NCBI RefSeq assembly: GCF_002113885.1
Contig: NW_018404123.1
Location: 153,767-217,766 of the forward strand
Direction: 5' to 3'
DNA length: 64,000 nt
Source of the DNA: Mizuhopecten yessoensis
Lineage: Eukaryota
Shown: positions 31,692 to 64,000 of the stretch, piece after piece
Position numbering within the stretch: the first letter of the stretch is position 1
How the letters are laid out: every line of letters starts with the position of its first letter
Program-made: the position numbers and the translations under genes
The notes under the pieces: generated by a model
Told to the model about the DNA's origin: nothing
The model's database searches: none
The model's input: only the letters and a program-made list of their open reading frames with translations

Positions 31692-32385
31692 TCGTGAGTT
31701 ACTCCATGAGTTACATCGTGAGTTACCAAGTGAGTAAACCCGTGGGGTACTTCGTGAGTTACCCCGTGAACTATCCCGTGAGTTACATCATGAGTTACCT
31801 TGCAAGTTACCCAGTGAGTTACATCCTGAGTTATGCCGTGAGTTAGTCTGTGAGTTACGCCGTGAGTTACGCCGTAAGTTACACCGTGAGTTTCAATGTG
31901 TGTTACGCCGTAAATAACACTGTGAGTTACACAATTACACCGTGAGTCACACCGTGAGTTACGTCGTGTGTTACGCCGTAAGTTACACTGTGAGTATACG
32001 CCGTAAGTTACACTGTGAATATACGCCGTAAGTTACACTGTGAGTATATGCCGTAAGTTACACTGTGAGTATACGCCGTGAGTTTCAATGTGAGTATACG
32101 CCGTAAGTTACACTGTGAGTATACGCCGTGAGTTTCAATGTGAGTTTACGCCGTAAGTTACACTGAGTATACGCCGTAAGTTACACTGTGAGTATACGCC
32201 GTGAGTTTCAATGTGAGTATACGCCGTAAGTTACACTGTGAGTATACGCCGTAAGTTACACTGTGAGTATACGCCGTGAGTTTCAATGTGAATATACGCC
32301 GTAAGTTACACTGTGAGTATTATCCGTAAGGTTGATACTGTGAGTATACGCCGTAAGTTACACTGTGAGTTACATCGTGAGTTAG
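31692..32385. repeat. 12-bp minisatellite, copy B, expanded with a derived 25-bp unit (cgccgtaagttacactgtgagtata)
   Basis: Same flanks as 15458-15770 but about twice as long. Confidence 0.95.
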
Positions 32386-40800: not shown

Positions 40801-43800
40801 CAAATTTTCGGAGCGATCCGCTCCTTCATATACATCATATTACAAGAAGATAGAACTGATATACTATAATTGAAAATATATCTATTATATAAAACCAATA
40901 GTCCCCTCGGCTAAAGACAGCCGAAGGCAGGAATTAAGCTGAGAGCATCGCAGACAAGGAACACTGATAGTCTAAATATCAGAACGCTCGCTGGCTCTGC
41001 TCTTTAGCGAAAATGCACTAAGACGACTCGCTCAATGAAACACAACGACGACCCGCCAAATGATAACCAAAATCGGAGAAGAATCCCTCTAGAAATCTCT
41101 TCAACTACTAAATATATGTAGAGGACCTATTCTTGCGCAAGATGCACTGTCACCTAGCCTAGATACATATATGTACATGTATTTTATGTTATCAGACTGT
41201 CTCAATTTAACCTGACCAGTCACAGTGGTTATATGTAATGTGTGCATTCAACCAAAGATTACCCAGTAACATAGGTTTCCAGACTAGTACAATTATCTCT
41301 CAATTATATGTAGACAACCTACATAATACAGTAGGTCAGGACTGCCGTTTTCTGCACAGAATTCCTTCTGGGTCATTTAGTTAAGGTCTGTTATTGCTCA
41401 GAATGTACAATGGATGATTTCGTTTCACTAATGAGAGACACTGCATCTATTGTTGCTCAAATAGGGAAAATTGAAGTAATTTTACATCTAATTATATAGG
41501 GAACATAATTCCAATATTACAAAGAACCATCACAAATGCTTTTGCATGAAGTATCTTTGTGATAACAGTTAATGTTATGATTCTATGGTGTCTGACATTG
41601 AGCCCAGGAATCCAAACTTGTGAAAGGAAAAGTTTTCTATTTCATGTACTACATATATATACAATTAGTTTTGGATCTGAATCCTCACCCTTTTTATGTG
41701 CTTATTTTTATTTCAGGGATCAGAGGTGAACTCAATGTCATTGTCAAGGTCGACCTGTTCAGCGACTTCAACAAGTTTCGACAGTCTTCATGTGGAGTTC
41801 AATTTTTCAGCAGTGAGTTGTTTCCCTTGTATTTTATTTTTTTTACTTTGGATTTCATTTCTTGACTTAAAAATATCCATCATCAGGTAGAAGTTTCTCA
41901 ATTGATCAAAGATTAAAATTTGACAAGAAAACCAATGTTATAATAATAAATTATTCAGTTGATAATGGATGAGACTGTTTACACATGTATTGCTTGTAGT
42001 TCCTTTTAGACCATACAAAATACATTAAAAACTATATCTGTTGCTCTTTCACTCGCTACTTAGCATCTGGTAGGTAGACCCAAATTTTGTCTGTTGGGAT
42101 ATGTATAGAAATACCTTTTCCCATTATATCATGAAGTCTGGAGTGTTTGATAACATTATAACCTCAATGTGCCTACTGGCACATGTACAGGAACAAGTTG
42201 TTTTGGGCCTTTGAACAGTCTTAAACTATTGTTATAGCTCTTATTTATGTCATTAATATCAATTAAAAGCAGTCAGCTGTTGGAGATATACTTTTGGAAT
42301 GTTGCTAGTGTTAGCTAAAGCACAAATCAGGTATCATTGATTGCTTTGTTTGTTACAGCTGCTGAGGTACCCTGTGGATACCGACTCCAGATGATCCATG
42401 GTTTTGTGGAGGAGTTGGTTGTTAATGACGACCCCGAGTATCAGTGGATTGATAAGATACGCACACCTCGTGCATCCAATGAGGCCAGACAGAGGCTCTT
42501 CTCCAGGCTCTCAGGTTACCATAGCAACAGTTCTATGTTCTCAAATTGTGAAAGAAAACCTGTGTTACTTTTGTTTATGGTATAACAAAGGCTCATCTTT
42601 AGTTAAAGCAACTTTATCAGAGGGCAAAATTTACTTTGGTCCTAGCACGCAAATTGTTTATCAGATTGCATGATCTGTTGTAAGTTAACACATTGAACTA
42701 CTTTCAGTTGGCATTCATAGGCACTATGAATGCCAACTGAAAGCAGTTCAATACTAATATTTACCATTTTTGGAATATATTGCTCATAGGAAAATAACTT
42801 ATAAAAATTCAGCATTAAGCTCAAACTGGTGTATGTATCATATATGCTTTTTCAATGAATAGAACAGCCATCTGTCCATTGGGGATCATTGGAATCCAAA
42901 CATTACAATTATGTTGTCATAATAATAACAATTGGGTCATGGCATTCATAGCCAACATGAATGCCACCTGAACTTTGTTTTCAGTGGCGGTGCTATAGAG
43001 TGATTAATCTTCTTAAGTGTCAATCAAACTATCTAGTTTGTTGCATATTCTGATTCTCTATTTTTCTAAGCTCAGATATCGTCAACTTGTATCTCTCTCA
43101 CATTGTTTTCTAGGAGAATTGCAGAGGAAGATTGGACTGAAAGTTTTAGAGCTCAGTGGTAATTCTGTAATAGGGTAAGTAGTAGGTAAATTATTAACTG
43201 GTGTACAAACATCTCCATATCAACCACTTCTATACAGAATGAATACTGGAGGTTAAAAGTAGTAGGTAAATTATTAACTGGTGTACAAACATCTCCATAT
43301 CAACCACTTTACAGAATGAAGTCTGGAGGTTAAAAGTAGTAGGCAAATTATTAACTGGTGTACAAACATCTCCATATCAACCGCTTCTATACAGAATGAA
43401 GTCTGGAGGTTAAAAGTAGTAGGAAAATTATTAACTGGTGTACAAGTGTACAAACATCTCCATATCAACCACTTCTATACAGAATGAATACTGGAGGTTA
43501 AAAGAAGTAGGTAAATTATTAACTGGTGTACAAGTGTACGAACATCTCCATATCAACCACTTCTATACAGAAGTCTGGAGGATAAAAGTAGTAGGTAAAT
43601 TATTAACTGGTGTACAAGTGTACGAACATCTCCATATCAACCACTTCTATACAGAAGTCTGGAGGATAAAAGTAGTAGGTAAATTATTAACTGGTGTACA
43701 AGGGTACAAACATCTCCATATCAACCACTTCTATACAGAATGAATACTGGAGGTTAAAAGAAGTAGGTAAATTATTAACTGGTGTACAAGTGTACGAACA

Positions 43801-46800
43801 TCTCCATATCAACCACTTCTATACAGAAGTCTGGAGGATAAAAGTAGTAGGTAAATTATTAACTGGTGTACAACTGTACAAACATCTCCATATCAACCAC
43901 TTCTATACAGAATGAAGTCTGGAGATTAAAAGTAGTAGGTAAATTATTAACTGGTGTACAACTGTACAAACATCTCCATATCAACCACTTCTATACAGAA
44001 TGAATACTGGAGGTTAAAAGTAGTAGGTAAATTATTCACTGGTGTACAAACATCTCCATATCAACCACTTCTATACAGAATGAAGTTGGAGGTTAAAAGT
44101 AGTAAGTAAATTATTAACTGGTGTACAAGTGTACAAACATCTCCATATCAACCACTTCTATACAGAATGAAGTTGGAGGTTAAAAGTAGTAAGTAAATTA
44201 TTAACTGGTGTACAAGTGTACAAACATCTCCATATCAACTACTTCTATACAGAAGTCAGGAAGTTAAAAGTAGTAGGTAAATTATTAACTGGTGTACAAG
44301 TGTACAAACATCCCCATATCAACCACTTCTATCCAGAATGAAGTCTGGAGGTTAAAAGTAGTAGGCAAATTATTAACTGGTGTATAAACATCTCCATATC
44401 AACTACTTCTATACAGAAGTCTGGAGGTTAAAAGTAGTAGGAAAATTATTAACTGGTGTACAAACATCCCCATATCAACCACTTCTATACAGAATGAAGT
44501 CTGGAGGTTAAAAGAATAATTTAAACGGTGTGATCTCCGCAAATAAGTAATGATAATATTCTTTGATATGTATGGCTTAAGAATGTTTTATTCTGGATCA
44601 TAAACAACATTTGATAAACAAGAACATTTATGTAGAGCCCTTCTTTAGGTTAATGTTACTTATAAATGTCACAAGTACTGCTATTGGTACAGTGCCAAAA
44701 TAAGTAAAATTGAGTCCCAACACGGAAAAGGGAGAACCAACATCCTGGTTTGTTGTAGTCGGTGATAAGTGGATTGTAGTAGGAATCTGCATTAGAATTG
44801 ACTAGCACTCCATTGCTGAAACTTTTAAAAGGAATAGGAAAGATGGAGCAACAACATCTAGGTTTCTGAGTTTATTTACAGTTTACATGTTTCGGCTAGG
44901 TAGGCTAGACATCATCAGATCAACAACTTACAATATAATAATATGATTTCTGTTTTCTCTTCCATAACAACAGTATACAATATAATAATATGATTTTCTC
45001 TTTTCTCTTCCATAACAACAGTATACAATATAATAATAGAATTTTCTGTTTTCAATTCCATAACAACAGTATACAATATAATAATAGAATTTTCTGTTTT
45101 CAATTCCATAACAACAGTATACAATATAATAATAGAATTTTCTGTTTTCTCTTCCATAACAACAGTATACAATATAATTATAGAATTTTCTGTTTTCAAT
45201 TCCATAACAACAGTATACTAAATAATAATAGGATTATTACATATGATATTTGACATGTTGAAGTTTTCTGTTTGACACAGGTACACTCAGTGTTTTGATC
45301 TAGAAGGAGAGTCTGGTATTGTGGTACGGAGTATTGGTACAGCAGTTACCATCAACAGACCCGACCTTAAACCTGTGCCATCACCACTGGGAGTCTCGCC
45401 ACAGCCCAAAGAGTAAGAATTCCATTAAAGGGCGATAACTCTGATGTGTTAGTAGGGCAAATTAATGTTGTTTTTTGAAGAAATTATTTTCTAATTTATT
45501 ATTTTTTTAAATTAATTAATTTAACTATTAAAAGTGGATTTGAACTTTGTCTATAAATTGATATTTTAGCTGCATAGATAAAGATATTATTACAACTCTC
45601 CCAGTGATAAAAGTTTCCTGCCAAGCTCAATTTTTCAATTCATCTTCTTATAAGAAAAAATTGAATGGTTTCAATTTCTCTTTACCAGGTCATTTTTAAA
45701 GGTTTTTTTTCATTTAACTGTTAAAACTTCAATGTTAATGGTTAATCAATATTCAGTTATCTGGTCAGGGCTATTCCAGGTATGACTATATGAGAGGAAA
45801 AGGGGTGCGGGTGGGGGGGTCAGAAGGGTTTCACTGACCCAATCACCTGACCCACATTGTAGTTGTTTCCCTGTCCTGACTACCCGGTAAACTACATATA
45901 ATTATTGTAGACTCCATCACCATGCAATTTAGTGAAAATGCCTGACAACCACCCCACCCCCACTTCCCATTTGTTGATATCTGAAGTAGCCCAAATGATT
46001 TTATAGTTAATATTTGTGATTTAAAAATTGTTAAATTTTTCTTTCAAGCAGCATTCAATTCAAAACCCTTGCTACATGAACAATATCAATTATATAAGAT
46101 AGCACAGCTCTTACATTTAATATGCCTTACATGTACTTAATATGAAGACTTAAAATCTAATACATATATATATATATTATATTTTTCATTGGAACTTAAT
46201 TGCTAAGCATACAAGATACTTATTAAAGGTAATTGTTTGATTTTGTACCTTTATTGTAAATACTCACATGGTAGCTGGCCTGCCTCACTCGTCCCCACTG
46301 ACTCTATAATAGGCACTGTCTTTTATGTAGTTCTCTTTTCTATCTTTGCATGATTGTTCATCTTGTGCCATGAAAGATACAGTTGTCAATGAGGAAATAA
46401 ATGCAAAATATAAAGAGCTGGGGGTTTTCCCAGAAGTAATGGTCTTCATCTTGTCAAAAATATCACCAGTTAAAATAATTCTAAAGATGAAAGCTAGAAA
46501 ATGGAGGAAAAAACCCTTCATACTTAGTTTAGGTCCATTATGTTGTATAAGTGTATTTAGTTGCATCATATCACATTAAAAACGGTATTATTACTCATTC
46601 CATTAACACAATAAGGTTAGGTATGTCCTGACCACATTCAACCTTATGACCTTAACCTTCACCCACTAGGAAATAGGTTTCTTGGTCATATCTGTTACAG
46701 AGATTTGTGTAGGGAGATCATACTTGGTAAACATGTACATCATGGTCAAGTGCTGTGTCATACAGCAAAATAGGGTCAATGTAACCTCTATTTGGTGTTG

Positions 46801-49800: not shown

Positions 49801-52800
49801 AATGAAAGTATGTATTTAATCAATCGTTTCCGTACCAGAAAACTAGTCTGATTGAGAATGAGAATGTATTTTAAAATTATTGCTTCTGTAAAAGGCAACT
49901 TAAGTTTGAATGATAGTTTTTATTGAAACTGTGGTTTAGCTACCAGGAAACCTCACATCTGACAGAATGTATAATTATCAAGACTTGTGTTTGACCAGGA
50001 AAGTCAATTTTAACAGAATGTATTGAATCTATTGTTTATAAACCCCACTACATAATTGGAGGATGTATCAAGGGTTTGCTTTTTTCTTTGTCCAGCTGTA
50101 CGTCCATCAGTAACTTATATTGGTTAGAATTTGTTCCTATCACCATCACTCTTAATACTAGACATCCAACCGTCATTAAACTTCGTGTATGGCTACATCT
50201 GAAATACTACTCCAATATTTCAAATCCAGGGTACATATGCTCTTTTAAGTTTCACTGACTCTTATTGAATCTGTTGTCTTTGTACCATGAAGTCTGACTG
50301 ACAATAGGTATTGAATCTGTTGTCTTTTTACCATGAAGTCTGACTGACAATAGGTATTGAATCTGTTATCTTTGTACCATGAAGTCTGACTGACAATAGG
50401 TATTGAATCTGTTGTCTTTTGACCAGAAGTCTGACTGACAATAGGTATTGAATCTGTTGTCTTTTTACCATGAAGTCTGACTGACAATAGGTATTGAATC
50501 TTTTGTCTTTGTACCATAAAGTCTGACTGACAATAGGTATTGAATCTGTTGTCTTTGTACCATAAAGTCTGACCGACAATAGGTATTGAATCTGTTGTCT
50601 TTGTACCATGAAGTCTGACTGACAATAGGTATTGAATCTTTTGTCTTTGTCCCATAAAGTCTGACTGACAATAGGTATTGAATCTGTTGTTTTTGTACCA
50701 TAAAGTCTGACCGACAATAGGTATTGAATCTGTTGTCTTTGTCCCATGAAGTCTGACTGACAATAGGTATTGAATCTTTTGTCTTTGTCCCATAAAGTCT
50801 GACTGACAATAGGTATTGAATCTGTTGTCTTTTTACCATGAATTCTGACTGACAATAGGTATTGAATCTGTTGCCTTTTTACCATGAAGTCTGACTGACA
50901 ATATGTACTGAATCTGTTCTCTTTGTACCATGAAGTCTGACTGACAATAGGTATTGAATCTGTTGCCTTTTTACCATGAAGTCTGACTGACAATATGTAC
51001 TGAATCTGTTGTCTTTGTACCATGAAGTCTGACTGACAATAGGTACTGAATCTGTTGTCTTTGTACCAAGAAGTCTGACTGACAATAGGTATTGAATCTG
51101 TTGTCTTTGTACCATGAAGTCTGACTGACAATATGTACTGAATCTGTTGTCTTTTTTCCAGGAAACAACAGTTTAACTGAGAGCAGTGGTAGTGGCAGTG
51201 CGTTTGGCAGTGGAGGAAAAGTCATACCCAAACTGTCAGCCCAGCAGCCCAGTATAGAGATGATGGTAGGTTTAATCCAAATTTCTGGTTGTGAGGGGAT
51301 ATTGTAATGATGCTATCTCCTCAATTGTGAGGGGATATTGTAATGATGCTATCCCCTCGATTGTGAGGGGATATTGTAATGATGTTCATCCCCTCGATTG
51401 TGAGGGGATATTGTAATGATGTTCATCAACTTGCTGTAGGTAGAGATTTGGTTTCCACTCAATGAAAAAAAATTCTATGAGCTGTTAGACTTACTTAAAC
51501 CTGATACAATGCTTCCTCATTGAAAGTGCTTCCTTGGAACGGTTTTTCAGATCCAAATGTCAAAGGTTAAGATCACTGATAAACTTTTAATTTGGTTTCC
51601 AACAATAACTCAAGTGTCCGTCAGCCGATCAAAGTTAAACTTTATACTGTGTTTTCATATCGAAAGTGCATGTGTGAATAAGCTGTTACTCTAAACACTG
51701 GTTGGGGAAATATTATTACTCCATGATCAATGCCTTGTTTTGTTTGATATAACACTCTTTTCAATCACAAGAAACATAATATGAAGATTTGATGAAATTG
51801 TAGCAAAGACAGCAATTGTAGCAGTTTGCTTTTCTTTCTATGATTTGACTAAATATGTTGTTAAAGGTGATTTGGTGATGTCTTAAAAATATTTCAAACG
51901 CATTATCAAGTATAAGGTGTTTATAAAACTGTTGGAGTCTTATTTCAAAATAATTTGAAATGGAAACTCTTTGAGGTTCTTTTATCACATTTGTCACCAG
52001 AGATATATAATTTGTATATTGAGTGAAAAAATGATAGAGAACAGATGGTCATCTGTTGTTCATAAAAAATTGGTTATGGCTATCACTATCTCTGTTTCAC
52101 TTGTGCCAGTATAGAATACGTATATGATATGGTGGTGAGGAAGCCTGTTATAAATGTACCCATTAACCAGCTGACCTTGACTTCCAGGAGTACCCGTTTT
52201 TCACAATGACATCCTTCCCTCCTGGCTTCATCGTCCACCTGGGAGGTGTGGTGTCTGCCCGCTCCGTCAAACTCCTGGACAGGATACATAACCCAGGTAA
52301 CGTCACCACACCTAACCAGAATAGCTGATTTTTAGAGATCTACATGTATAACCCTTATAAGACAATTTGATATAATTTTAAAATATTTTATCTTTGATAG
52401 TTTGATAGCTGAAAAGCTTGAAACTAATATTTGTGCAATTTGATTTACATGTTTATGCATGTATTTGTATACGCCCGTCGAATGACTGGACGCATTATGT
52501 TTTTACGCAGGCGGGCGGGCGGGCGGGGGGGTGGGTACACATTAGTTTCCGCTCAATAACTTGAGTAATTTTGAATGGATTAATTTCAAACTTGGTAGGA
52601 AGGTTTCATTGCAATAAAAGCTTGCACAAGTTCGATAACCATTATCCACCTTTTATTAAGTGAGTTATGGCCCTTTAAAGAATTGACGTAACAGTTTACG
52701 CTCAATAACTTGAGAAATTTTGAATGCATTCATTTCAAACTTCAGCCATACTTTACAGACTTAAGGCCTTTTGTAGAATTGTCGGAACACAATTTCTGCG

Positions 52801-55800
52801 CAATATCTTTATGCACTTATGGCCCTTTGTGGCAAACTGCTCATTCGACATCTGACAGGCGTTTCATGTACCGCTTTGCGGAATTCTTGTTTTGTTATAT
52901 GTCTGAAATAACAGTTTTAATACTAGTCATAACCTCTCATCAAAGTGTAGGCTATATATACATAGCAGTAATTAGGTTGCTTACTCCTATAATTTTACAA
53001 CATCTATTTCATGGTTGCTCACTCTGTCATTCTTTATGATAAAACTCCAATCTTTTAAGTTACCGTAACTATGCATTTTTATTATTTTAAGCTTTAAATC
53101 TCTACTTGATGTTAATCTTTATATTAAAGAATAAAGGAGTATTTTATCAATAACAAATAATATATAAAAATAAACATTGAACTTTGCAACAGGAACTTGA
53201 TAGCCATTTATTGTATTGAAATTGTAACTTTTAAGAGTAGTTTATGAAAATGTCTTAGCTTGCATCTTAATCAACTGTTTTACTTATTGTTGACTGCAAC
53301 ATTGGCTGGCAAAACCTGAAATATACGTGTCAGCAGGACTGACATCACAATATAAAATGATGTGGGATGTTTTGTGATGATGTTAGTATTGATATGGATC
53401 CATGTTTTGAATGTTGCAATCCTGCCATTACAATGTTACAGAATTTGAACTATGATATCCAAATCATTCATTAATGTGAAATATGAAATTTGAATTAAAA
53501 ACAGAAATAAAAGAGATATCAGAAGATATAAGATATACAAGAAATGTAAGAGAATAAAAACAAAAACACCTATGTTCTTAAATTATTCAAGTGATTTATA
53601 ATAATCAGTGACAGAACTTTTGTTGGAAACATTAATATGTGACTATGTATGCATAATGTTGCTTTCAAAGTTATTTCAAACATTCATGGCATCAACATGT
53701 TATAAGTATATACTTTTTAATAAGATTTTTGAGGATTTTAATTTTCAGTAAATCTGTACAATTTTTTCTGTATATATTACGCTGCTGACAATTCCAATTT
53801 GCTTTTGACAGAGGAACCAGAGACTCGTGACGCTTGGTGGACTGAGATACGGACAGAGATCCGATCACACGCCCGTGCCATGGGATGTCACGCGGTCCTC
53901 GGCTACTCCGAGCACACCTCAATCTGGTCAGTACAGGTTGTACTAAGCACTAAGCCTCAGACATCAGGCTTTGCCATTGAGAGAATAATTTCCCCTTTTA
54001 AAAGCAGCGAAATTACAGAAATGTTATGATGGAGCTGAAGAAGTACTGTTTTAAAAAATATCACAAAACAGTTATACTAATTGTTTTGATTGTATAAATT
54101 GTATGTCTATGTACTGTAAAATGCTGTAGAGTGGCTTATTATAGCTAGATAGGGCGTTATATTAAATGTTGTATATTTTTTTATTTATATAATTTGTATT
54201 GTTTTCTTTTTGGGAAGCAGCATTTTTTTTCTTCAAAGTTATTCAAAATACTGTGGTATACTAAACATCAGTTTGTAATTGGTCAGCATTATTTCAATAT
54301 ATACAATTGCAGTGATGAAGTGATTGTCCTTTCTGCCATGGGGACAGCTGCTCGAGTAACTGTGACCTCTGACCTCACTCAGTTACTACGGCATACGAGT
54401 CAGCCTGTAGTCCCTCCGCATGAACGTCCACAGATCGACAAAGACAAGAGGTTGTTTGTGGATGTCAATCTGGCCAATCAGGTCTCTCAAAACAAAACCT
54501 TCCACGGAGGCTTTGGGTAAGTATATAGCCAATTAGGTCTCTCAAAACAAAACCTTCCATGGAGGCTTTGGGTAAGTATAGAGCCCATCAGGTCTCTCAA
54601 AACAAACCCTTCCACGGAGGCTTTGGGTAAGAATATAGCCAATCAGGTCTCTCAAAACAAAACCTTCCACGGAGGCTTTGGGTAGGTATAAAGCCAATCA
54701 GATCTCTCAAAACAAAACCTTCCATGGAGGCTTTTGGTAAGTATATTGCCAATCAGATCTCTCAAAACAAAACCTTCCATGGAGGCTTTGGGTATAGCCT
54801 ATCAGATCTCTCAAAACAAAACCTTCCATGGAGGCTTTGGGTAAGTATAAAGCCAATCAGATCTCTCAAAACAAAACCTTCCACGGAGGATTTGGGTTAG
54901 TATATAGCCAATCAGATCTCAAAACAACAACATCCATGGAGGATTTGGGTATAGCCAATCAGATCTCTCAAAACAAAACCTTCCGTGGAGGCTTTGGGTA
55001 AGTAAAAAGCCAATCAGATCTCTCATAATAAAATTTGGTCTCCCAAAAAACAAAATTCTGTGGAAAGTCATTGTGTCATCTGCAACGTGACGCAGACTTG
55101 GTACATATATTGCATACCAACATAGCTCGAACGAGTTCGCATTTCAGAAGTTTACATGCATTTTTGGTGGAGTTATGCCCCTTTTATTGCCAAATAAGGG
55201 CATTGTGTAGTAAATGCAAGAACTTTTTAAAATTTTGAATCCATACCTTTCAAATTTTGTATGGTAATGCTAGAAGCAATAATGTTAAACATATATTACA
55301 GGTTTTTATTGTCGAGTTTCAACTTTCCCCGTTTTGGCATATCACACTTGACATAGCAACGCTGTTTATCCTTTTTGTCGTTAATTTTTGCTTAATTACG
55401 CGATAATCAAGCCAAAGCACTTTTCTCACTAAAAGCGCTGAGCATGCCACGCATCCACTCCTGTGGAATTCTTATTTTCAAATTGTATACTACAGCAAGT
55501 GATTGAAATCCACAACAATTTATAATCAATTTAAAGTACTTTTAACATGTTATATTCCAATGTGTCTTTCCATCATTTTTTTTCTCATTATTCCATTGTT
55601 TTGTCCTTATACCAGGTTTTTGTACTCCAGGTTTGACGACAGTATCCAGAGTAACTGTTCCCTGTGCCACATACCCTACAAGGCTAGCTCCACCCCTTTC
55701 CCTGTTAAGCTTGCTTTATGTGCCATATGCAAGTGAGTTTCAATAATTTTACTGTAAAATAAACATTGAACATTATACAGTGAATGTTTTAAAAGTCTTT

Positions 55801-58800
55801 CATGCCCAGGAGGTGTAGGGTAAGAAAATTCCATCCGAGGGGTTTTCAAATTAGGTAAACCCGAGGCTTGCCAAGGGTTTTGTACCAGTTTGAAAATCCT
55901 GAGAGTGGAATTTCCCTATATATTTAAGTGTTGAGAAAAATAAGAGCAGAGGTGGTCTCATTGCACACAATATATTTCACCATCTAACAAAACACTTGCC
56001 CAGGGATGGCCTGGTTGTCAATACCTTGGAATAACTTTCCATCTACAAACAATTTATGTTTTTATTTGTCTTAAAATAGAATTACTGTAGTTCATATATC
56101 AGAAACCAAAATGTGCAGATTAATGCACTCACTGCCTAAATTTTGTTAGATTCTTCTAGATGATGGCATGATATTGTTATTAAGACTGGATACAAGATTA
56201 AATATCACATGTGTCTGTATGTCTGTCTTCACAGAAAGAAAAAGGTTCCCGACGTCCTTTTCACCACCGTCGACCCTCCGAGTGAGATTCAGATTTGTGG
56301 GCGGGGCTCACTTATACAGGCAAGGTGGGTGAGGATAAAATTACTAATTAATACCCTTGTGGAAGTTACTATAAAAATAAAATAATTAAACACATTTCAA
56401 TGAATCCTGATTTTCTGTTGATGATTATGGAAAAAAAATCATATGTTTGATATCTGCTTAGTAAACAAACACTTCAATTGATATTCACAAGCAGCAAAGC
56501 TTACACAAAGTTCAGTTTTCTCACACCAGCTTCAGCTTTCTCTCTCGCCATTACCAAAACACATCAGTGTTGTAACAAACAGCTGATTGTTGAGTGACAT
56601 ACTTGCCATTCACATAATCCTCAATGTTACTGAAATCCCTTTATATCCTGATATGTTAATGTCACATCAATTTACAGAATGAGTAGATCATGAGATCATA
56701 CATAGAAAGAAAATTCACTCCAACACATTTATACTAGGAATATATATGGTAGGATCATTAAGTGAATGTAAATAAAACACATTATGTACATTTTTATCAG
56801 CAACAAGAATGGTGAGATGGTTAATAATGCAAAGTACTTTATTCATATTTGTATTAATTCTAAATGTTTCCCTGGTAATATTTGATATTTTATGCTAATA
56901 TTTGTTCATGTTGTTTCAGAATCTGTAGAGTGAAGTTGAAAGGAAAAGGGGAGACAAATGCAAGGGAGATAAGTGATGTAGGTATTTCACCCTTTATGCA
57001 TTTGATTATGCAATGGAGATTATTGATGTAGTATTTCACCCTTTTATACATTTGATTAAACAAGGGAGATTAGTGATGTAGATATTTCACCCTTTATACA
57101 TTTGATTATACAAGGGAAATTAGTGATGTAGGTATTTCACACTTGATACATTTGATTATACAAGGGAGATTAGTGATGTAGATATTTCACCCTTTATACA
57201 TTTGATTATACAAGGGAGATTAGTGATGTAGGTATTTCACACTTGATACATTTGATTATACAAGGGAGATTAGTGATGTAGATATTTCACCCTTTATACA
57301 TTTGATTATACAAGGGAGATTAGTGATGTAGGTATTTCACACTTGATACATTTGATTATACAAGGGAGATTAGTGATGTAGATATTTCACCCTTTATACA
57401 TTTGATTATACATGGGAGATTAGTGATGTAGGTATTTCACACTTGATACATTTGATTATACAAGGGAGATTAGTGATGTAGGTATTTCACCCTTTATACA
57501 TTTGATTATACAAGGGAGATTAGTGATGTAGATATTTCACCCTTTATACATTTGATTATACATGGGAGATTAGTGATGTAGGTATTTCACACTTGATACA
57601 TTTGATTATACAAGGGAGATTAGTGATGTAGGTATTTCACCCTTTATACATTTGATTATACAAGGGAGATTAGTGATGTAGATATTTCACCCTTTATACA
57701 TTTGATTATACATGGGAGATTAGTGATGTAGGTATTTCACACTTGATACATTTGATTATACAAGGGAGATTAGTGATGTAGGTATTTCACCCTTTATACA
57801 TTTGATTATACAAGGGAGATTAGTGATGTAGATATTTCACCCTTTATACATTTGATTATACATGGGAGATTAGTGATGTAGGTATTTCACACTTGATACA
57901 TTTGATTATACAAGGGAGATTAGTGATGTAGGTATTTCACCCTTTATACATTTGATTATACAAGGGAGATTAGTGATGTAGATATTTCACCCTTTATACA
58001 TTTGATTATACATGGGAGATTAGTGATGTAGGTATTTCACACTTGATACATTTGATTATACAAGGGAGATTAGTGATGTAGGTATTTCACCCTTTATACA
58101 TTTGATTATACAAGGGAGATTAGTGATGTAGGTATTTCACCCTTTTATACATTTGATTACAAGGAGATTAGTGATATAGGTATTTCACCCTTTTATACAT
58201 TTGATTACAAGGAGATTAGTGATGTAGATATTTCACCCTTTTATACATTTGATTACAAGGAGATTAGTGATATAGGTATTTCACCCTTTTATACATTTGA
58301 TAACAAGGAGATTAGTGATTATCTCATCCTTTAGACCATGTGATTACTTGTAGTAGGTTGGATCATGATGCGAGTATCTTGCCCTTTAGACTTACAGTCT
58401 GTTGTTTAACATAATTAAGTGTTGTAAGCTGTTAACGAGGAAATACTGACTAAACACAGTTATTATAACAATTTATCAGTGAACCATTAAATCACAATGC
58501 CAGATAGCATAATGATTTTAATCTACTTGAACGAAATCAAGTGTTAAAGCTGAAAGAAACAAGAATTATAAAGAGCAATGCTAACTTGGTTAGCAAGTCA
58601 CCTTCACATTTCCCTTTTACTTAACTGATATGGGCAGTGACGTTGGAATACAATGTGTGCTGGAATGTGATTCCCATCGTTCTGTGTGTTTCAGAGCCTC
58701 CCCTTCCTGGAGTACGAGTTACACAACCAACTGATGAACAAGTTAAAGGTACGTATAGGTCACACATAATTTGGGTCTCAGACATTTCTCAATTTACTCT

Positions 58801-60006
58801 TATACTGGTAGTTGCATGGGCACAATTCCATAGCCCCCTCCCAGTTTCAGAATTTTATGAATTAAATTCAAAGTCTGATGTTTGAAATTCATTGAAAACA
58901 AAATTATATTTCGCCTTTATTTTTATACAGCCTAGCAACCATTGTTAAACATAATAGCAGTATGATCAACATAAATTCAGTACTGTTGTATATACAATAT
59001 TCTGTCAGAGTGAAATCTTGTTAATCTAAACACACCTTGTTTTAGAAAATTAGTCAGGATCAAAACATCTTCAAAATTAAAGGATCTCAGGTCATCAAGA
59101 TTCCACATTAAACTCACTGTGATGTAACAATATGATAGCAAGAGTTGATCAACATGAGATTTGCTGTACTTCTACTTATAGTATTCTTGTTTCTCTAGCT
59201 ACGTGGTATGAACGGTCTGTTTGGCCTGAAGATACAGATTTCTGTCGGGGATACCCTGCTGGTTGGAATAGCTGTAAGTAATAAGTAGCAGAGTGTCTGA
59301 GTTTGTTCTCCTTGAAATTGCTTTGAAGTCTGTGCCAACAGGTAGAAATCTTCTTGTCTATAGATTGTAATTGTCTGTCAGAGTTCTCAGAATCACCCAA
59401 ATGAGGGTTCTTCACCCCCAAAACAGTTGGTACGTACCCCCTGTTTTAACAATTCCCCTATGTAACTAGGTACCTAGAGTTACAGAGTCTTGGTAATGTA
59501 TCAAATATACCCATACCCCCAAATCTAAAATTCAGTGGGAACACTGTGTATTATATTTTAAGACATTGACCTAGAATAAGTTTACAAATTTGAGTTATCT
59601 GTCACTTCCTGTTTATAAGAGTATAAGCTACTGGGTACTGATGTCAGGTTGTTGCTATTACAGACTGCCACTGCCGTGTTTTTGACAGCTCTACTGCTGC
59701 CACCTATACCCAAGGTCACTGGACAGGTAAGTCATACAGTCATGGACATATCTAAGTAGGCTGTAGAGAAAATATGCAATATGTTGTAATTCAATAACCT
59801 TTTGGTTTTCAATTTCTTATTAAATAAACCCGAAAAAATGACTGACATGTTTTGACTTTATAATGTGATGAAATAAAAATAAATAAAACCTTTGTGTTGT
59901 TGTGTAGGCGACGTCAGAGCGTGAGAACCTGGCCCTGATAGACCTACAGAAGAAGATTATTGAGACGGTACAGAAGAATCGAGAGATACACGATCTCGTA
60001 CATATT
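37786..60006 (+). CDS. C2CD5: C2 domain-containing protein 5 (KIAA0528/CDP138 orthologue), 20 coding exons, 727 codons, 3' partial
   Basis: Spliced translation MPGKLKVRVVSGRSLPIMDRSTDLTDAFVE...HGFVEELVVNDDPEYQWIDKIRTPRASNEARQRL...GGVVSARSVKLLDRIHNPEEPETRDAWW...LPFLEYELHNQLMNKLKLRGMNGLFGL is colinear with vertebrate C2CD5. All introns are GT-AG and phases are consistent (2181 nt in total). Confidence 0.96.
38837..38923 (+). CDS. C2CD5: C2CD5 coding exon 2
   Basis: VRFGNEAFKTDVCKRSLNPQWASEWFKFE, AG/GT flanks. Confidence 0.93.
39212..39252 (+). CDS. C2CD5: C2CD5 coding exon 3
   Basis: VEDESLQDDPLELR, AG/GT flanks. Confidence 0.92.
39385..40215 (+). mobile_element. HINE/Helentron-type element with internal ~147-bp tandem repeats
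   Basis: Repeated aaatgacct...tcaaggtca units; 3' end caggtgagtaatacaagccctctgggcctcttgtt (sub-terminal repeat plus hairpin). Confidence 0.75.
40281..40490. repeat. 30-bp minisatellite x7 (agggccagtatgatagagtaaggccttaca)
   Basis: Direct tandem repetition ending about 95 nt before exon 4. Confidence 0.95.
40584..40714 (+). CDS. C2CD5: C2CD5 coding exon 4
   Basis: VLDHDTYSAHDAIGKVYIDLNPLL...SGWFPIYDTMH. Confidence 0.93.
41717..41812 (+). CDS. C2CD5: C2CD5 coding exon 5
   Basis: GIRGELNVIVKVDLFSDFNKFRQSSCGVQFFS. Confidence 0.93.
42359..42514 (+). CDS. C2CD5: C2CD5 coding exon 6
   Basis: AEVPCGYRLQMIHGFVEELVVNDDPEYQWIDKIRTPRASNEARQRLFSRLS. Confidence 0.93.
43114..43174 (+). CDS. C2CD5: C2CD5 coding exon 7
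   Basis: GELQRKIGLKVLELSGNSVIG, donor gtaagt. Confidence 0.93.
43177..44513. repeat. ~80-bp minisatellite (about 16 copies) starting inside the exon 7 donor
   Basis: Unit aagtagtaggtaaattattaactggtgtacaa...ctggaggttaa; the first aagt is positions +3 to +6 of the donor. Confidence 0.95.
44930..45232. repeat. 48-bp minisatellite (about 6 copies)
   Basis: Unit caatataataatagaattttctgttttcaattccataacaacagtata; ends about 50 nt before exon 8. Confidence 0.93.
45281..45412 (+). CDS. C2CD5: C2CD5 coding exon 8
   Basis: YTQCFDLEGESGIVVRSIGTAVTINRPDLKPVPSPLGVSPQPK. Confidence 0.92.
47874..48080. repeat. ~66-bp degenerate tandem repeat
   Basis: aagtttaacatcagcaa recurs; explains ORFs 47889-48290 and 47910-48125. 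Confidence 0.8.
49177..49490 (+). CDS. C2CD5: C2CD5 coding exon 9 (Ser/Pro-rich; 5' boundary uncertain)
   Basis: Ends RRRRRSSDSDISNTPPK, like the SSSSDTDLSLTPK region; phases fit; other in-frame acceptors at 49210 and 49339. Confidence 0.8.
50265..51161. repeat. 46-bp minisatellite (about 19 copies) ending in the exon 10 acceptor
   Basis: Unit ttgaatctgttgtctttgtaccatgaagtctgactgacaataggta; the last partial unit is gaatctgttgtcttttttccag|. Confidence 0.96.
51162..51265 (+). CDS. C2CD5: C2CD5 coding exon 10
   Basis: GNNSLTESSGSGSAFGSGGKVIPKLSAQQPSIEMM, phases fit. Confidence 0.88.
51289..51428. repeat. 36-bp tandem repeat x4 with internal hairpin (gaggggat...atcccctc)
   Basis: Starts at intron position +24 after exon 10. 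Confidence 0.9.
52188..52296 (+). CDS. C2CD5: C2CD5 coding exon 11
   Basis: EYPFFTMTSFPPGFIVHLGGVVSARSVKLLDRIHNP. Confidence 0.93.
52463..52891 (+). mobile_element. Short HINE-like element
   Basis: tatacgcccgtc start, (GGCG)n microsatellite, duplicated gctcaataacttgag unit, 3' gacaggcgt...ccgctttgcgg hairpin, then ttcttgtt. Confidence 0.65.
53812..53926 (+). CDS. C2CD5: C2CD5 coding exon 12
   Basis: EEPETRDAWWTEIRTEIRSHARAMGCHAVLGYSEHTSIC. Confidence 0.93.
54313..54516 (+). CDS. C2CD5: C2CD5 coding exon 13
   Basis: DEVIVLSAMGTAARV...NLANQVSQNKTFHGGFG, donor gtaagt. Confidence 0.88.
54473..55025. repeat. 55-bp minisatellite (about 10 copies) spanning the exon 13 donor
   Basis: Unit gccaatcaggtctctcaaaacaaaaccttccacggaggctttgg|gtaagtatata = 44 exonic + 11 intronic nt. 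Confidence 0.96.
55631..55732 (+). CDS. C2CD5: C2CD5 coding exon 14
   Basis: FDDSIQSNCSLCHIPYKASSTPFPVKLALCAICK; alternative in-frame acceptor at 55616. Confidence 0.9.
56235..56324 (+). CDS. C2CD5: C2CD5 coding exon 15
   Basis: KKKVPDVLFTTVDPPSEIQICGRGSLIQAR. Confidence 0.93.
56920..56977 (+). CDS. C2CD5: C2CD5 coding exon 16
   Basis: ICRVKLKGKGETNAREISD, donor gtaggt. Confidence 0.9.
56961..58319. repeat. 50-bp minisatellite (about 27 copies) spanning the exon 16 donor
   Basis: Unit caagggagattagtgat|gtaggtatttcaccctttatacatttgattata = 17 exonic + 33 intronic nt. Confidence 0.97.
58695..58748 (+). CDS. C2CD5: C2CD5 coding exon 17
   Basis: SLPFLEYELHNQLMNKLK. Confidence 0.93.
59199..59273 (+). 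CDS. C2CD5: C2CD5 coding exon 18
   Basis: LRGMNGLFGLKIQISVGDTLLVGIA. Confidence 0.93.
59664..59726 (+). CDS. C2CD5: C2CD5 coding exon 19
   Basis: TATAVFLTALLLPPIPKVTGQ. Confidence 0.9.
59908..60006 (+). CDS. C2CD5: C2CD5 coding exon 20
   Basis: ATSERENLALIDLQKKIIETVQKNREIHDLVHI, donor gtgagt. Confidence 0.88.
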
Positions 60007-60953
60007 GTGAGTCCACTTACGTTGGTATACAAGATCTGACAGAGACCAGTAAGAGGTCATGTTCAGATGACCTTTTAACAAACCATTCAAATCACAGGTT
60101 GCAAAATTTGTCGGATCATATTTTCCTCAGCACTCATTGGTTGGTAGTTATTGCATAGATAACATCCAAGTTTCCTGATTGTAAACCAAACTAAAATGGC
60201 TGGTTCCATGGAAAACCCTCTCATGCCAAAAATGATGTATTTATTGGACAAGTTCTGTGTAATTAGTGGTTTACCATTTATTTTTAAGGAAACTACCGAA
60301 ACAGGAAGGAGATGTATTTACAAAGAAATGTACAGATCAGAAGCTAACATTAAATGATGATATGATCAAACTAGTTTTACATACACTGTCAAACAGGCAT
60401 ACAAGAGATGCCTTTTGATTGGCTGAAAAAGTCATGTTGTATGGTAATCATTCAGGTTGTCTGAACATGACCCCTTACTGGCTACTGTTAGATCTTCATA
60501 CGTAGTGTATAATGAATATCTTTATTATAATCAGATCACTTAGTACCCTAGTGCACCTTAACATTCCAATGATAATGTTGATTTACGATCTTGTAGAATA
60601 ATTCTTACAACATTATTTCAAATCTTCTACAAGAAGTAGCAAATATGACAAGGTACAAAAAGTGACTTAATGCAAAATCGATTCCTGGGCTTATAAAAAT
60701 TGTTCATGCAACGTTGTTTCACAATCTTGTATGAATAGTGACTAATGAAAACTTGATCACAACCTATACGTGCAGAAAGTTAATAACTGCAAATACTGTA
60801 TGTTACTAGTGATAAGCCTAGGAATACATGAAAACATGTCGGTAGTAGAGGGTGGGCTTATCACCCAATATGAGCCTATCGGTCATAGGCTCAGACTAGA
60901 CATCGTGGTCTGCCATTTTGGTTCCGAATATCATAGCTTACCAATCGGAACTG

Positions 60954-62560
60954 GTAGACAGTTAACAAGGGAGTGGACTTAATACTAAGTACGTGGTAGT
61001 CACTGATCAAGTAGACAGTTAACAAGGGAGTGGACTTAATACCAGGTACGTGGTAGTCACTGATCAAGTAAACAGTTAACAAGGGAGTGGACTTAATACC
61101 AGGTACGTGGTAGTCACTGATCAAGTAAACAGTTAACAAGGGAGTGGACTTAATACCAGGTACGTGGTAGTCACTGATCAAGTAAACAGTTAACAAGGGA
61201 GTGGACTTAATACCAGGTACGTGGTAGTCACTGATCAAGTAAACAGTTAACAAGGGAGTGGACTTAATACCAGGTACGTGGTAGTCACTGATCAAGTAAA
61301 CAGTTAACAAGGGAGTGGACTTAATACCAGGTACGTGGTAGTCACTGATCAAGTAAACAGTTAACAAGGGAGTGGACTTAATACCAGGTACGTGGTAGTC
61401 ACTGATCAAGTAAACAGTTAACAAGGGAGTGGACTTAATACCAGGTACGTGGTAGTCACTGATCAAGTAAACAGTTAACAAGGGAGTGGACTTAATACCA
61501 GGTACGTGGTAGTCACTGATCAAGTAAACAGTTAACAAGGGAGTGGACTTAATACCAGGTACGTGGTAGTCACTGATCAAGTAAACAGTTAACAAGGGAG
61601 TGGACTTAATACCAGGTACGTGGTAGTCACTGATCAAGTAAACAGTTAACAAGGGAGTGGACTTAATACCAGGTACGTGGTAGTCACTGATCAAGTAGAC
61701 AGTTAACAAGGGAGTGGACTTAATACCAGGTACGTGGTAGTCACTGATCAAGTAAACAGTTAACAAGGGAGTGGACTTAATACCAGGTACGTGGTAGTCA
61801 CTGATCAAGTAGACAGTTAACAAGGGAGTGGACTTAATACCAGGTACGTGGTAGTCACTGATCAAGTAGACAGTTAACAAGGGAGTGGACTTAATACCAG
61901 GTACGTGGTAGTCACTGATCAAGTAGACAGTTAACAAGGGAGTGGACTTAATACCAGGTACGTGGTAGTCACTGATCAAGTAGACAGTTAACAAGGGAGT
62001 GGACTTAATACCAGGTACGTGGTAGTCACTGATCAAGTAGACAGTTAACAAGGGAGTGGACTTAATACCAGGTACGTGGTAGTCACTGATCAAGTAGACA
62101 GTTAACAAGGGAGTGGACTTAATACCAGGTACGTGGTAGTCACTGATCAAGTAGACAGTTAACAAGGGAGTGGACTTAATACCAGGTACGTGGTAGTCAC
62201 TGATCAAGTAGACAGTTAACAAGGGAGTGGACTTAATACCAGGTACGTGGTAGTCACTGATCAAGTAGACAGTTAACAAGGGAGTGGACTTAATACCAGG
62301 TACGTGGTAGTCACTGATCAAGTAGACAGTTAACAAGGGAGTGGACTTAATACCAGGTACGTGATAGTCACTGATCAAGTAGACAGTTAACAAGGGAGTG
62401 GACTTAACACCAGGTACGTGGTAGTCACTGATCAAGTAAACAGTTAACAAGGGAGTGGACTTAATACCAGGTACGTGGTAGTTGTCACTGATCAAGTAGA
62501 CAGTTAACAAGGGAGTGGACTTAATACCAGGTACGTGGTAGTCACTGATCAAGTAGACAG
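60954..62560. repeat. 57-bp minisatellite (about 28 near-identical copies)
   Basis: Unit gtagacagttaacaagggagtggacttaataccaggtacgtggtagtcactgatcaa; source of the 557-aa repeat ORF. Confidence 0.97.
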
Positions 62561-63190
62561 TCACTTTTTCTTGCCGGCCAGTCTGTCAAACACATTGGTG
62601 GCCATGCGTTCCTTGTGTTCCTTGGAGAACTCGAGTTTCCTGTTTATATTGTTACTAGATGATGTTACTTTTGAAGAGTTTATTACTTTCTTATTCGTGA
62701 GGGCGTCGGGATCATTTTTGTGAGGGGCCTTGACAAAATGCACTGAGTGACCTTTGGTGTCCCTGTTAGATTGTACCGATCCACCTTTTGTATTTTTGCT
62801 AGCAGGTAATGGGTGATCTTTCAGATCTGTTTTAGTTTGTACAGAGTGACCTTTTGAATCTCTGTTGGGTTGATATGAATGACCTTTGGAGTCCTTGTTG
62901 GGTTGTACTATTGAGTGTGTTTCTATGTGTTGAGAGGTCATTGTAGATAAACTTTGTGTATCAGATGACAAGTTGAGATTGGAATCAGTCTTGGCGGTAC
63001 GGTCCTCTGTTAGAACTGACTGTCTACGGTTACCATGGTTACTGAGGTGCTGTTCTCTCACAATCACAGAACCTGGCGTAAAACCTGTTTTATTGTCACC
63101 ATTTGTTGTTTTGCTATTTTGCTTTCTCCAATTTTCAAATTCTTTCTTTGTGGGTATATTTGCTGCATAAAACTCTGGAATTTTGCCAAT
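62561..63190 (-). CDS. Probable terminal coding exon of an unidentified gene, antisense to and probably nested in C2CD5
   Basis: Strong acceptor (long T-run then acag, ending 63191). Open frame of 209 codons IGKIPEFYAANIPTKKEFENWR...MATNVFDRLAGKKK* with degenerate 11-aa repeats. Confidence 0.7.
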   Translation of the reverse strand: MGKIPEFYAANIPTKKEFENWRKQNSKTTNGDNKTGFTPGSVIVREQHLSNHGNRRQSVLTEDRTAKTDSNLNLSSDTQSLSTMTSQHIETHSIVQPNKDSKGHSYQPNRDSKGHSVQTKTDLKDHPLPASKNTKGGSVQSNRDTKGHSVHFVKAPHKNDPDALTNKKVINSSKVTSSSNNINRKLEFSKEHKERMATNVFDRLAGKKK

Positions 63191-63216
63191 CTGTAAAAAA
63201 AAAAAAAAAAAAATCC

Positions 63217-64000
63217 TTAAGGATGTACTCTTCTGAGGTTTCAATCACGTTCAAGTCTCGTTTTGGTCTAGTTTAATGGGTTTTTGTAATATTTAACAAA
63301 TTATGGTCAAGTTTATTAGCAATCGCGCGTCTGAAAAATATGTCAAAAAACTAGATGCCTGTTGTTTGTAGAACTTTTTTGACAAGAATTTAAAAAAATT
63401 ACCAATTCGGTGGCCATTTTGAAAATGTGTATTAATGTGTATTTCCTGCGCTTAAAAAAAGGCCAAAATTTCACCTTTTTTGACAGTAGATTGATCACTT
63501 AAATTGTCATTGTGTCGCCATTTATAATTGTAGCAGGTTCAATTTTGCTGTACAACTTTATAATGTTCAATATGATAAAAAAGTATGCAACAAACTGGAA
63601 AATTATACATTATTGATAATTTTTGTACGTATTTAGTGTAACTGAAGCACTTTTGATTTTTGACCCCGAAAAAGGTAAAAAATAACACAAATGATAATGG
63701 GACAAAAAAAGAAGCACACTGACCCCCATTTTTTAGATGTTTTAGAAAGAGAAACACATTTTCATTTAATTCATTAAATATTAAAAAAAAGCTTTAATAC
63801 CAGAACTTTTTATATCAAGCATTTAATCTGCAAAAAAATGGTAAAAAAATAGTATTTTTTCATTAAAAAATAGGGGGTAGGGGTAACTAAAATCGGCTTT
63901 CTGAGTTAAAAGAATAAGATTAAAAATTTTTACTTCCATAATTTAAAAGAAAATAATATTTTCATCAATTCTACAAACATTCGTACATATATGATAACAC
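63217..64000. mobile_element. Probable non-autonomous DNA transposon starting at a TTAA site; runs off the window
   Basis: ttaa|ggatgtac boundary followed by element-like sequence (ggccattttgaaaat, cttaaaaaaaggcc). The other end is not visible. Confidence 0.3.

What the first reader, a model, noticed from the sequence alone, without database searches (positions are those of the whole stretch)
43175..62563. Unrelated minisatellites anchored on exon boundaries: a possible splicing-linked repeat expansion process
Seen: five large arrays with no shared sequence each have one edge on a functional boundary: exon 7 donor (80 bp), exon 10 acceptor (46 bp), exon 13 donor (55 bp), exon 16 donor (50 bp), and the stop of the antisense exon (57 bp). 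Three more lie within about 25-95 nt of an exon. Each unit is made from local junction sequence and extends only away from the exon, so these are not inserted transposons. Inference: either expansion nucleates at exon edges (spliceosome pausing, R-loops, exon nucleosome or methylation borders), or selection keeps only intron-ward expansions. Either way the transcript carries stacks of decoy splice signals.
Basis: partly seen in the sequence, partly recalled or inferred. Interest (0 to 1): 0.8.

Follow-up and report, generated by a model that had tools for sequence, protein, structure and literature searches.

The report
Minisatellites built from exon–intron junctions
In a scallop gene (C2CD5), several unrelated tandem-repeat arrays begin or end on an exon edge because each was copied from that junction, so introns carry up to about 25 spare splice sites that gene models and one related transcript do not use.

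Summary
The window is Mizuhopecten yessoensis (Yesso scallop), and the gene is C2CD5. The RefSeq model maps exactly onto the window.

- **Arrays and exon edges.** The 88-bp array starts at +3 of the exon 7 donor. The 46-bp array ends in the exon 10 acceptor. The 55-bp unit is the last 44 nt of exon 13 plus its donor. The 50-bp unit is the last 17 nt of exon 16 plus its donor.
- **57-bp array.** It starts at the stop codon of a conserved, nested antisense ankyrin gene.
- **Origin.** All five units match only this locus in the 988-Mb assembly, so they are not transposon-borne.
- **Same pattern elsewhere.** It recurs downstream in the same gene and in C2CD5 of Argopecten, Ylistrum and Pecten. A clam (Mercenaria) locus shows none.
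- **Enrichment.** Across the four scallops, 20 of 87 arrays sit on a coding-segment edge, against 8–10 expected. Excluding the window it is 17 of 75, P about 3e-4 to 2.5e-3.

The splicing-linked interpretation is only partly supported. Two arrays anchor on stop codons, and how far units reach into the exon varies widely. This fits local slippage duplications that survive because the exon-proximal site is still used, as in the human F7 intron 7 VNTR. The roughly 2–3-fold excess stays unexplained. No genome-wide test could be run. Other first-reader notes report the same pattern on other windows of this genome; I did not check them.

The parts
43114..43174 (+). C2CD5 exon 7 (...GNSVIG); donor GT at 43175-43176
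   Evidence: Exact mapping of P0151; tblastn with P0001; sequence
43177..44514 (+). 88-bp (84-92) minisatellite, about 15 units, starting at +3 of the exon 7 donor. Each unit carries AGTAGGTAAAT.
   Evidence: TRF; edge extension; sequence; single-locus in own genome; absent in Argopecten, Pecten and Ylistrum
44929..45235 (+). 48-bp x6.4 array ending 45 nt before exon 8 (near an exon, not anchored)
   Evidence: TRF; exon map
50263..51161 (+). 46-bp x19 minisatellite. Its last partial unit becomes the pyrimidine tract and AG (51160-51161) of exon 10. Decoy units read CCATG where the real site reads CCAGG.
   Evidence: TRF; sequence; single-locus; absent in Argopecten and Pecten
51162..51265 (+). 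C2CD5 exon 10 (GNNSLTESS...SIEMM)
51289..51427 (+). 36-bp x3.7 hairpin-like array starting 23 nt after the exon 10 donor (near, not anchored)
54314..54516 (+). C2CD5 exon 13. Its last 44 nt (ANQVSQNKTFHGGFG) form the exon part of the first 55-bp unit.
   Evidence: conserved coding in the spider orthologue; transcript-like P0274 reads ...NKTFHGGFG|FDD
54473..55033 (+). 55-bp x10.5 minisatellite = exon 13 end + GTAAGT donor + 5 nt. Orthologous arrays in Ylistrum (x13.6), Pecten (x4.9) and Argopecten (about 1.7 copies).
   Evidence: single-locus; 7 of 7 located decoys keep GT
56920..56977 (+). C2CD5 exon 16 (ICRVKLKGKGETNAREISD)
56961..58332 (+). 50-bp x27 minisatellite = last 17 nt of exon 16 + GTAGGT donor + 27 nt of intron. 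24 of 26 decoys keep GT and 14 are identical in the 9-mer.
   Evidence: single-locus; arrays with other periods at the same junction in Argopecten (44 bp) and Pecten (67 bp)
60954..62561 (.). 57-bp x28 minisatellite (98% identical units) in C2CD5 intron 20. It abuts the stop codon of the nested minus-strand gene, so it lies in that gene's 3' UTR.
62561..63244 (-). ORF holding the last coding exon of a nested antisense ankyrin-repeat gene (ends ...NVFDRLAGKKK, TGA at 62561-62563). The exon's true start lies inside this ORF, near 63200. An upstream Ank exon sits just outside the window, near 65542-65649 in extended coordinates.
   Evidence: tblastn/tblastx to Argopecten intron 20; nested Ank gene also called in Pecten and Mytilus

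Best explanation
These are locally born minisatellites. Each began as a short tandem duplication (28-90 bp) whose seed straddled or touched the edge of a coding segment. Most edges are 5' splice sites; some are acceptors or stop codons. Slippage or unequal exchange then amplified the seed (inferred).

The copies are silent because the exon-proximal site stays in use: the first donor, the last acceptor or the first stop codon. Every further copy therefore lies in an intron or UTR. A unit holds only one kind of splice site, so it cannot be read as an exon on its own (inferred).

Duplications that lie wholly inside an exon are removed by selection. What remains visible is arrays pinned to coding edges that grow away from the exon. 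Scallop genomes make such arrays at a high rate, so the pattern recurs at many junctions and turns over between lineages.

Shown: anatomy, local origin, recurrence, and the excess at edges. Model-level: which site is used in Mizuhopecten. Unexplained: why edges are hit 2-3 times more often than uniform seeding predicts.
For: - **Units contain real, conserved exon sequence plus the donor.** Exon 13, exon 16, and exons 22, 24 and 26 downstream of the window.
- **Single-locus in the 988-Mb genome**.
- **Same architecture in three other scallops.** It occurs at partly different junctions and with different periods. One of these assemblies is PacBio-based (Argopecten, PMC11439060).
- **Anchoring also occurs on stop codons**, and the exon overlap ranges from 0 to 56 nt. 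This points to a constraint boundary, not a cut site.
- **3' edges outnumber 5' edges 15 to 5**. In the exon 10 acceptor array the decoys lack the AG.
- **Site choice.** RefSeq models use the first donor. A transcript-like Logan protein of Argopecten type joins ...HGGFG|FDD...REISD|SLPF and ...NHLK|ASRTSK.
- **Precedent.** In human F7 IVS7, functional pseudo-donors stay silent because the most upstream site is chosen (PMC1557585).
- **Contrast.** The clam locus has about 45 arrays, mostly dispersed 145-350-bp families, and none within 84 nt of an exon.
Against: - A pure neutral filter predicts 8-10 anchored arrays of 87; 20 are seen. Among arrays of at least 200 bp the excess is about 3-fold. 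Some mutational bias or selective advantage at edges is not excluded.
- Decoy GTs vary less than other compared positions (3% against 5-8%). That is not what selection against decoys would give.
- Site usage in Mizuhopecten rests on a gene model, not on reads.
- The statistics come from one gene in four related species. Some arrays are shared by descent, so events are fewer than counts.
- Copy numbers in this short-read assembly are uncertain.
Confidence: 0.6

Rival explanations
1. A mutational process tied to splicing or transcription seeds the duplications at splice junctions. Candidates are U1-bound nascent RNA or R-loops, exon nucleosome or methylation borders, and fork stalling. On this view the excess is a hotspot, not a survivorship effect.
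For: - 2-3-fold excess over the uniform and GC-adjusted nulls, including out-of-sample DNA.
- Donors are favoured over acceptors.
- The same junctions are hit with different periods in different lineages: exon 16 at 50, 44 and 67 bp; the exon 26 donor and acceptor.
- Several more arrays start 8-25 nt from a donor.
- Donor-like GGTCAG motifs lie 28 nt apart at the unexpanded exon 24 junction of Ylistrum, which matches the Mizuhopecten period.
Against: - Two arrays anchor on stop codons, where no spliceosome acts.
- There is no fixed offset from the junction.
- The donor bias is equally predicted by selection against upstream decoy acceptors.
- There is no direct evidence for any such mechanism.
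Confidence: 0.22
2. The arrays are kept because they do something. Clusters of U1-binding sites next to a donor might strengthen its recognition, protect long introns from premature cleavage, or tune expression through non-productive splicing.
For: - The 55-bp exon 13 array persists in all four scallops.
- Decoy GT positions are slightly better kept than the rest of the unit.
- Large arrays are the ones most often anchored.
Against: - Most anchored arrays are lineage-specific. Exon 7, exon 10 and the 57-bp array are absent even in Pecten.
- Copy number varies from 1.7 to 13.6 at the one conserved site.
- Units at different junctions share nothing beyond the local splice site.
- Concerted evolution alone can keep decoys uniform.
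Confidence: 0.1
3. The arrays are assembly artefacts of the short-read Mizuhopecten assembly, or transposon-borne satellites that landed beside exons by chance.
For: - The assembly has 82,659 contigs and N gaps.
- A 164-nt stray contig carries the 57-bp unit.
- Outside the window, a 76-bp array with 100% identical units abuts an N run.
Against: - Units diverge by 2-14%, enough for short reads to place them.
- The same class of array is present in the Argopecten, Pecten and Ylistrum assemblies. It includes an orthologous 55-bp array.
- The units occur nowhere else in the genome.
- The units contain conserved exon sequence.
Confidence: 0.03

Closest known systems
Human F7 intron 7 (IVS7) 37-bp VNTR (Borensztajn et al. 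2006, PMC1557585)
   Same: [quoted passage not shown] The authentic donor is followed by identical pseudo-donors, which are functional but normally silent because the most upstream site is selected.
   Different: F7 is a single locus with a few copies. Here there are many junctions per gene, up to about 35 decoy donors in this species (38 in Ylistrum, and 111 decoy acceptors in Argopecten), acceptor-side and stop-codon-side versions, and recurrence across a whole bivalve family. Site choice has not been tested experimentally here.
Intron gain or splice-site duplication by tandem genomic duplication (AGGT model; e.g. potato RdRp, PMC4974935; Gao and Lynch 2009 from my own knowledge)
   Same: Internal tandem duplications that include a splice signal are tolerated because the spliceosome removes the extra copy.
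   Different: Those cases create a new intron from a two-copy duplication. Here an existing intron is lengthened by tens of copies and no new intron arises.
Transposon-borne satellite arrays of bivalves (Helentron/MITE-type; seen here in the Mercenaria locus and in the window's 27-bp and 324-bp arrays)
   Same: Tandem arrays that fill bivalve introns. Tandem repeats are the largest repeat class in scallop genomes (PMC10225492).
   Different: Those units recur at many loci and carry no host exon sequence. None touches an exon in the clam locus. The five arrays studied here are single-locus and junction-derived.

Membership tests
Junction-spanning VNTR of the F7 IVS7 type | The first (or last) repeat element spans the exon-intron boundary | tested here: met
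   Exon 13 overlaps its array by 44 nt and exon 16 by 17 nt. The exon 7 array starts at +3, and the exon 10 array ends in the acceptor.
Junction-spanning VNTR of the F7 IVS7 type | The authentic splice site is followed by near-identical pseudo-sites | tested here: met
   Exon 16: 24 of 26 decoys keep GT and 14 have an identical 9-mer. Exon 13: 7 of 7 keep GT. Exon 22 (outside the window): 34 of 34.
Junction-spanning VNTR of the F7 IVS7 type | Pseudo-sites stay silent and the exon-proximal site is used | tested here: inconclusive
   RefSeq models of Mizuhopecten use the first donor. A transcript-like Logan protein of Argopecten type joins exons at the innermost sites. No read-level data for this species were available.
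Junction-spanning VNTR of the F7 IVS7 type | Copy number varies between individuals | not testable with these tools
   There is only one assembly per species. Between species the exon 13 array has 1.7 to 13.6 copies.
Transposon-borne dispersed satellite | The same unit is present at many genomic loci | tested here: not met
   All five units match only C796, plus one 164-nt stray contig. The tool notes that very common words are skipped.
Intron creation by tandem duplication (AGGT model) | The duplication creates a new intron absent from relatives | tested here: not met
   All introns concerned exist at the same positions in the three other scallops; only the intron lengths differ.
   Two arrays anchor on stop codons: window 62561 and Pecten L012 43685.
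   One gene in four scallops gives 20 of 87 against 8.0-9.7 expected.

The most novel reading that the evidence does not exclude
Scallops (Pectinidae) have a lineage-specific mutational process that preferentially seeds and expands minisatellites at the 3' edges of coding segments. It could be coupled to transcription, splicing or exon chromatin. It would make junction-derived arrays a major driver of intron growth, and a natural library of genes with tens of competing splice sites.
Probability: 0.22. Interest if true: 0.8.

Novelty: new variant of a known kind. Interest (0 to 1): 0.6.

Why it matters
- **Natural test of splice-site choice.** Junction-spanning minisatellites are a ready-made test of how a spliceosome picks one site among many identical ones. 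The F7 case supported a 5'-to-3' scanning model from a single locus. Scallops seem to offer dozens of loci per gene neighbourhood, with both donor and acceptor versions.
- **Intron size and repeat content.** Introns that are about 300-800 nt without their arrays are stretched to 1-5 kb. This may help explain why tandem repeats are the largest repeat class in scallop genomes.
- **Annotation.** These arrays mislead gene prediction. The Argopecten RefSeq model reads repeat-derived codons in exon 13.
- **Open question.** If the excess at coding edges holds genome-wide, it needs a mutational or selective explanation that is not yet known.

Tried and rejected
- **Transposon origin.** Rejected by own-genome searches.
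- **Shared unit sequence.** None found.
- **Minus-strand ORF ending at a donor instead of a stop.** Rejected. The ...AGKKK* end and the gene end are conserved in Argopecten.
- **GC composition as the cause of the excess.** Arrays are slightly GC-richer than intron background (0.37-0.40 against 0.33). Tilting the null for this raises the expectation only from 8.0 to 9.7. Anchored and free arrays have the same GC.
- **Conditioning on the intron that holds each array.** The excess remains: 14 against 6.4.
- **Selection against decoy donors.** No sign of it.
- **Local origin of the 57-bp unit.** Only a 9-nt match to the Argopecten 3' UTR, so this is not shown.
- **Genome-wide sample of the own genome.** I did not try to get more by another route.
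- **Anchoring in the unannotated DNA I held.** This was the window's first 37 kb, 13 kb downstream, three 10-kb stretches and the Argopecten flanks. It gave one probable near-miss: a 48-bp x48 array about 40 nt past a likely donor at extended coordinate 111917. Nothing there was verifiable.
- **Other bivalve loci.** The Ostrea protein was not on record and the Mytilus gene range was too long.
- **Literature.** Searches found the F7 case but no genome-wide description. The library is incomplete, so this is not proof of novelty.
Full report
**What the DNA is.** The window is contig C796:153767-217766 of a 987.6-Mb, 82,659-contig assembly. The exons in 37.8-60.0 kb encode C2 domain-containing protein 5 (Pfam YbjQ_2). 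The RefSeq protein XP_021377240.1 of Mizuhopecten yessoensis (P0151) comes from this same 464,763-bp contig. It maps onto the window exon by exon without a mismatch. It is not human sequence. I did not build a joined coding sequence from the window. Exons were matched one at a time to public protein models (P0001, P0151), and the joined step was left out.

**The observation.** TRF finds the five arrays.
- The 88-bp array begins at 43177. That is position +3 of the exon 7 donor (GG|GTAAGTAGTAGGTAAAT).
- The 46-bp array ends in the pyrimidine tract and AG of exon 10. Its decoy units read CCATG where the real site reads CCAGG.
- The first 55-bp unit is the last 44 nt of exon 13 plus GTAAGT. That stretch is genuine coding sequence. 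A spider orthologue has IDVNLANQVKQ there, and a transcript-like protein reads ...NKTFHGGFG|FDD.
- The first 50-bp unit is the last 17 nt of exon 16 (AREISD) plus GTAGGT.
- The 57-bp array ends on the TGA of a minus-strand ORF.

That ORF is the last coding exon of a nested ankyrin-repeat gene in intron 20. The gene is conserved in Argopecten (same ...NVFDRLAGKKK* end), Pecten and Mytilus. This array therefore sits at a stop codon, in a 3' UTR, not at a splice site.

The units share no sequence. Each matches only this locus in the whole assembly.

**Beyond the window.** I fetched 50 kb downstream, which holds the rest of the gene. It carries three more junction arrays:
- 34 bp x35, unit CTCACCTACAACTTCCAG|GTTAGT..., at the exon 22 donor
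- 28 bp x12, unit AGATACAG|GTCAGT..., at the exon 24 donor
- 69 bp x9, starting at the exon 26 donor

Three other scallop C2CD5 loci show the same architecture.
- **Argopecten irradians** (L001; PacBio assembly per PMC11439060):
  - 44 bp x6 across the exon 16 donor
  - 36 bp x12.5 ending 2 nt before exon 25
  - 42 bp x111 ending 23 nt inside exon 26
  - 69 bp x10 across the exon 26 donor
- **Ylistrum balloti** (L010):
  - 29 bp x38 across the exon 9 donor
  - 55 bp x13.6 across the exon 13 donor
  - 36 bp x3 at the exon 23 donor
  - an array across the exon 27 acceptor
- **Pecten maximus** (L012):
  - 55 bp x4.9 at the exon 13 donor
  - 67 bp at the exon 16 donor
  - 23 bp x43 at the exon 20 donor
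  - 51 bp x5 at the exon 21 donor
  - 81-100 bp across the exon 26 acceptor
  - 83 bp x5.7 starting 3 nt before the C2CD5 stop codon

The exon 13 array is orthologous in all four species. Argopecten keeps about 1.7 copies. The window's exon 7, exon 10 and 57-bp arrays are absent even in Pecten, so they are young.

The clam Mercenaria (L011) gives the contrast. Its C2CD5 locus has about 45 arrays, mostly dispersed families of 145-170 or 320-350 bp. None lies within 84 nt of an exon.

**Is it more than chance?** The null model works as follows.
- Every array is collapsed to one unit.
- A seed of the array's own period is placed uniformly over all positions that leave the mRNA intact. These are positions wholly inside an intron, or across exactly one coding edge with a 5-nt tolerance.

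| Sample | Anchored | Expected | P |
|---|---|---|---|
| Four scallops, uniform null | 20 of 87 | 8.0 | 8e-5 |
| Four scallops, GC-adjusted null | 20 of 87 | 9.7 | 1e-3 |
| Excluding the window (it was picked for this pattern) | 17 of 75 | 6.9-8.3 | 3e-4 to 2.5e-3 |
| Excluding the window, arrays of at least 200 bp | 16 of 44 | 4.8-5.8 | 6e-6 to 7e-5 |
| Three loci, conditioned on the intron holding each array | 14 of 60 | 6.4 | 2e-3 |

Caveats: this is one gene, some arrays are shared by descent, and TRF edges are approximate.

**Mechanism.** Several facts argue against a process tied to the spliceosome itself.
- Two arrays anchor on stop codons.
- The exon part of the unit ranges from 0 to about 56 nt, with no preferred offset.
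- 3' edges (donor or stop) outnumber 5' edges 15 to 5. Selection on site choice predicts this. Extra donors downstream of the real one are harmless if the first is taken, whereas extra acceptors upstream of the real one are riskier.

The human F7 IVS7 VNTR is a tested precedent. Its pseudo-donors are functional but silent because the most upstream site is selected (PMC1557585).

In this window the RefSeq models use the first donor. A 726-aa Logan protein of Argopecten type joins exons at the innermost sites, on both sides of exon 26. Decoy donors are mostly intact: 24 of 26 at exon 16 and 34 of 34 at exon 22.

My reading is therefore local slippage-type duplication followed by survivorship at coding edges. 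The 2-3-fold excess is not explained by this. A hotspot near exon edges, or a benefit of the arrays, remains possible. At the unexpanded exon 24 junction of Ylistrum, two donor-like GGTCA motifs lie 28 nt apart, which equals the Mizuhopecten period. This could be a slippage substrate or a decayed array.

**Known or new.** A single junction-spanning VNTR is known (F7). Tolerance of internal duplications that include splice signals is also known (PMC4974935). Tandem repeats are already recognised as the largest repeat class in scallops (PMC10225492). I found no description of junction-derived arrays as a recurrent, lineage-wide feature, but the library searched is incomplete. Other first-reader notes of this scan report the same pattern on other windows of this genome. 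I could not check them.

Noticed in passing
L001:19540-19740 (Argopecten exon 13): The RefSeq model XP_069132346.1 (P0001) reads ...MTKKRTKINKTFCGCELANQSLKTKPSMEALGKSKKV through the repeat unit in another frame and uses a donor 13 nt further on. The transcript-like P0274 reads ...MDKDKRLFVDVNLANQVSQNKTFHGGFG|FDD. The junction repeat, or an assembly indel, appears to have misled the gene model.
   Followed up: partly
L012:43685-44161 (Pecten maximus): An 83-bp x5.7 array starts 3 nt before the C2CD5 stop codon. It is a second case of an array pinned to a stop codon and not a splice site.
   Followed up: partly
window 1572-2595 and 18043-18296; 15459-15779 and 31693-32384: Two array families each occur twice in the window: a 27-bp unit TTATCATGTCACAATAGATAGGTACAT, preceded both times by the same flank encoding ...FISNRAIM.TFKVHACYHVTID, and a 12-bp unit CGTGAGTTACAC. 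These look like dispersed, element-borne arrays, a different class from the junction arrays.
   Followed up: no
window 35384-36395; L001:37151-38156; L011:24950-25838: A short GC-rich microsatellite (ACGGACG, CGTC or GTCGGC) sits directly beside a tandem repeat of about 160 or 320-350 bp. The same architecture appears in the scallop and clam loci, which suggests a shared mobile-element type.
   Followed up: no
C796 downstream of the window, extended coordinates 72061-76446: A 76-bp x58 array with 100% identical units starts right after an N. This is a possible gap-filling artefact. Intron 20 is 24 kb and has two N runs.
   Followed up: no
window 62561-63244 (-), and about 65542-65649 outside the window: A nested antisense ankyrin-repeat gene lies in C2CD5 intron 20. 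It is conserved in Argopecten, Pecten and Mytilus.
   Followed up: partly
extended coordinates 109616-112148 (outside the window): A 48-bp x48 array (99% identical units) begins about 40 nt after a probable minus-strand donor (...DKSSW|gtaatt). That donor would end an ORF starting MPRKRKKSS..., and the gene is not identified.
   Followed up: partly
window 1-1189: Another first-reader note calls this a box-jellyfish-type pore-forming toxin homologue. I did not examine it.
   Followed up: no
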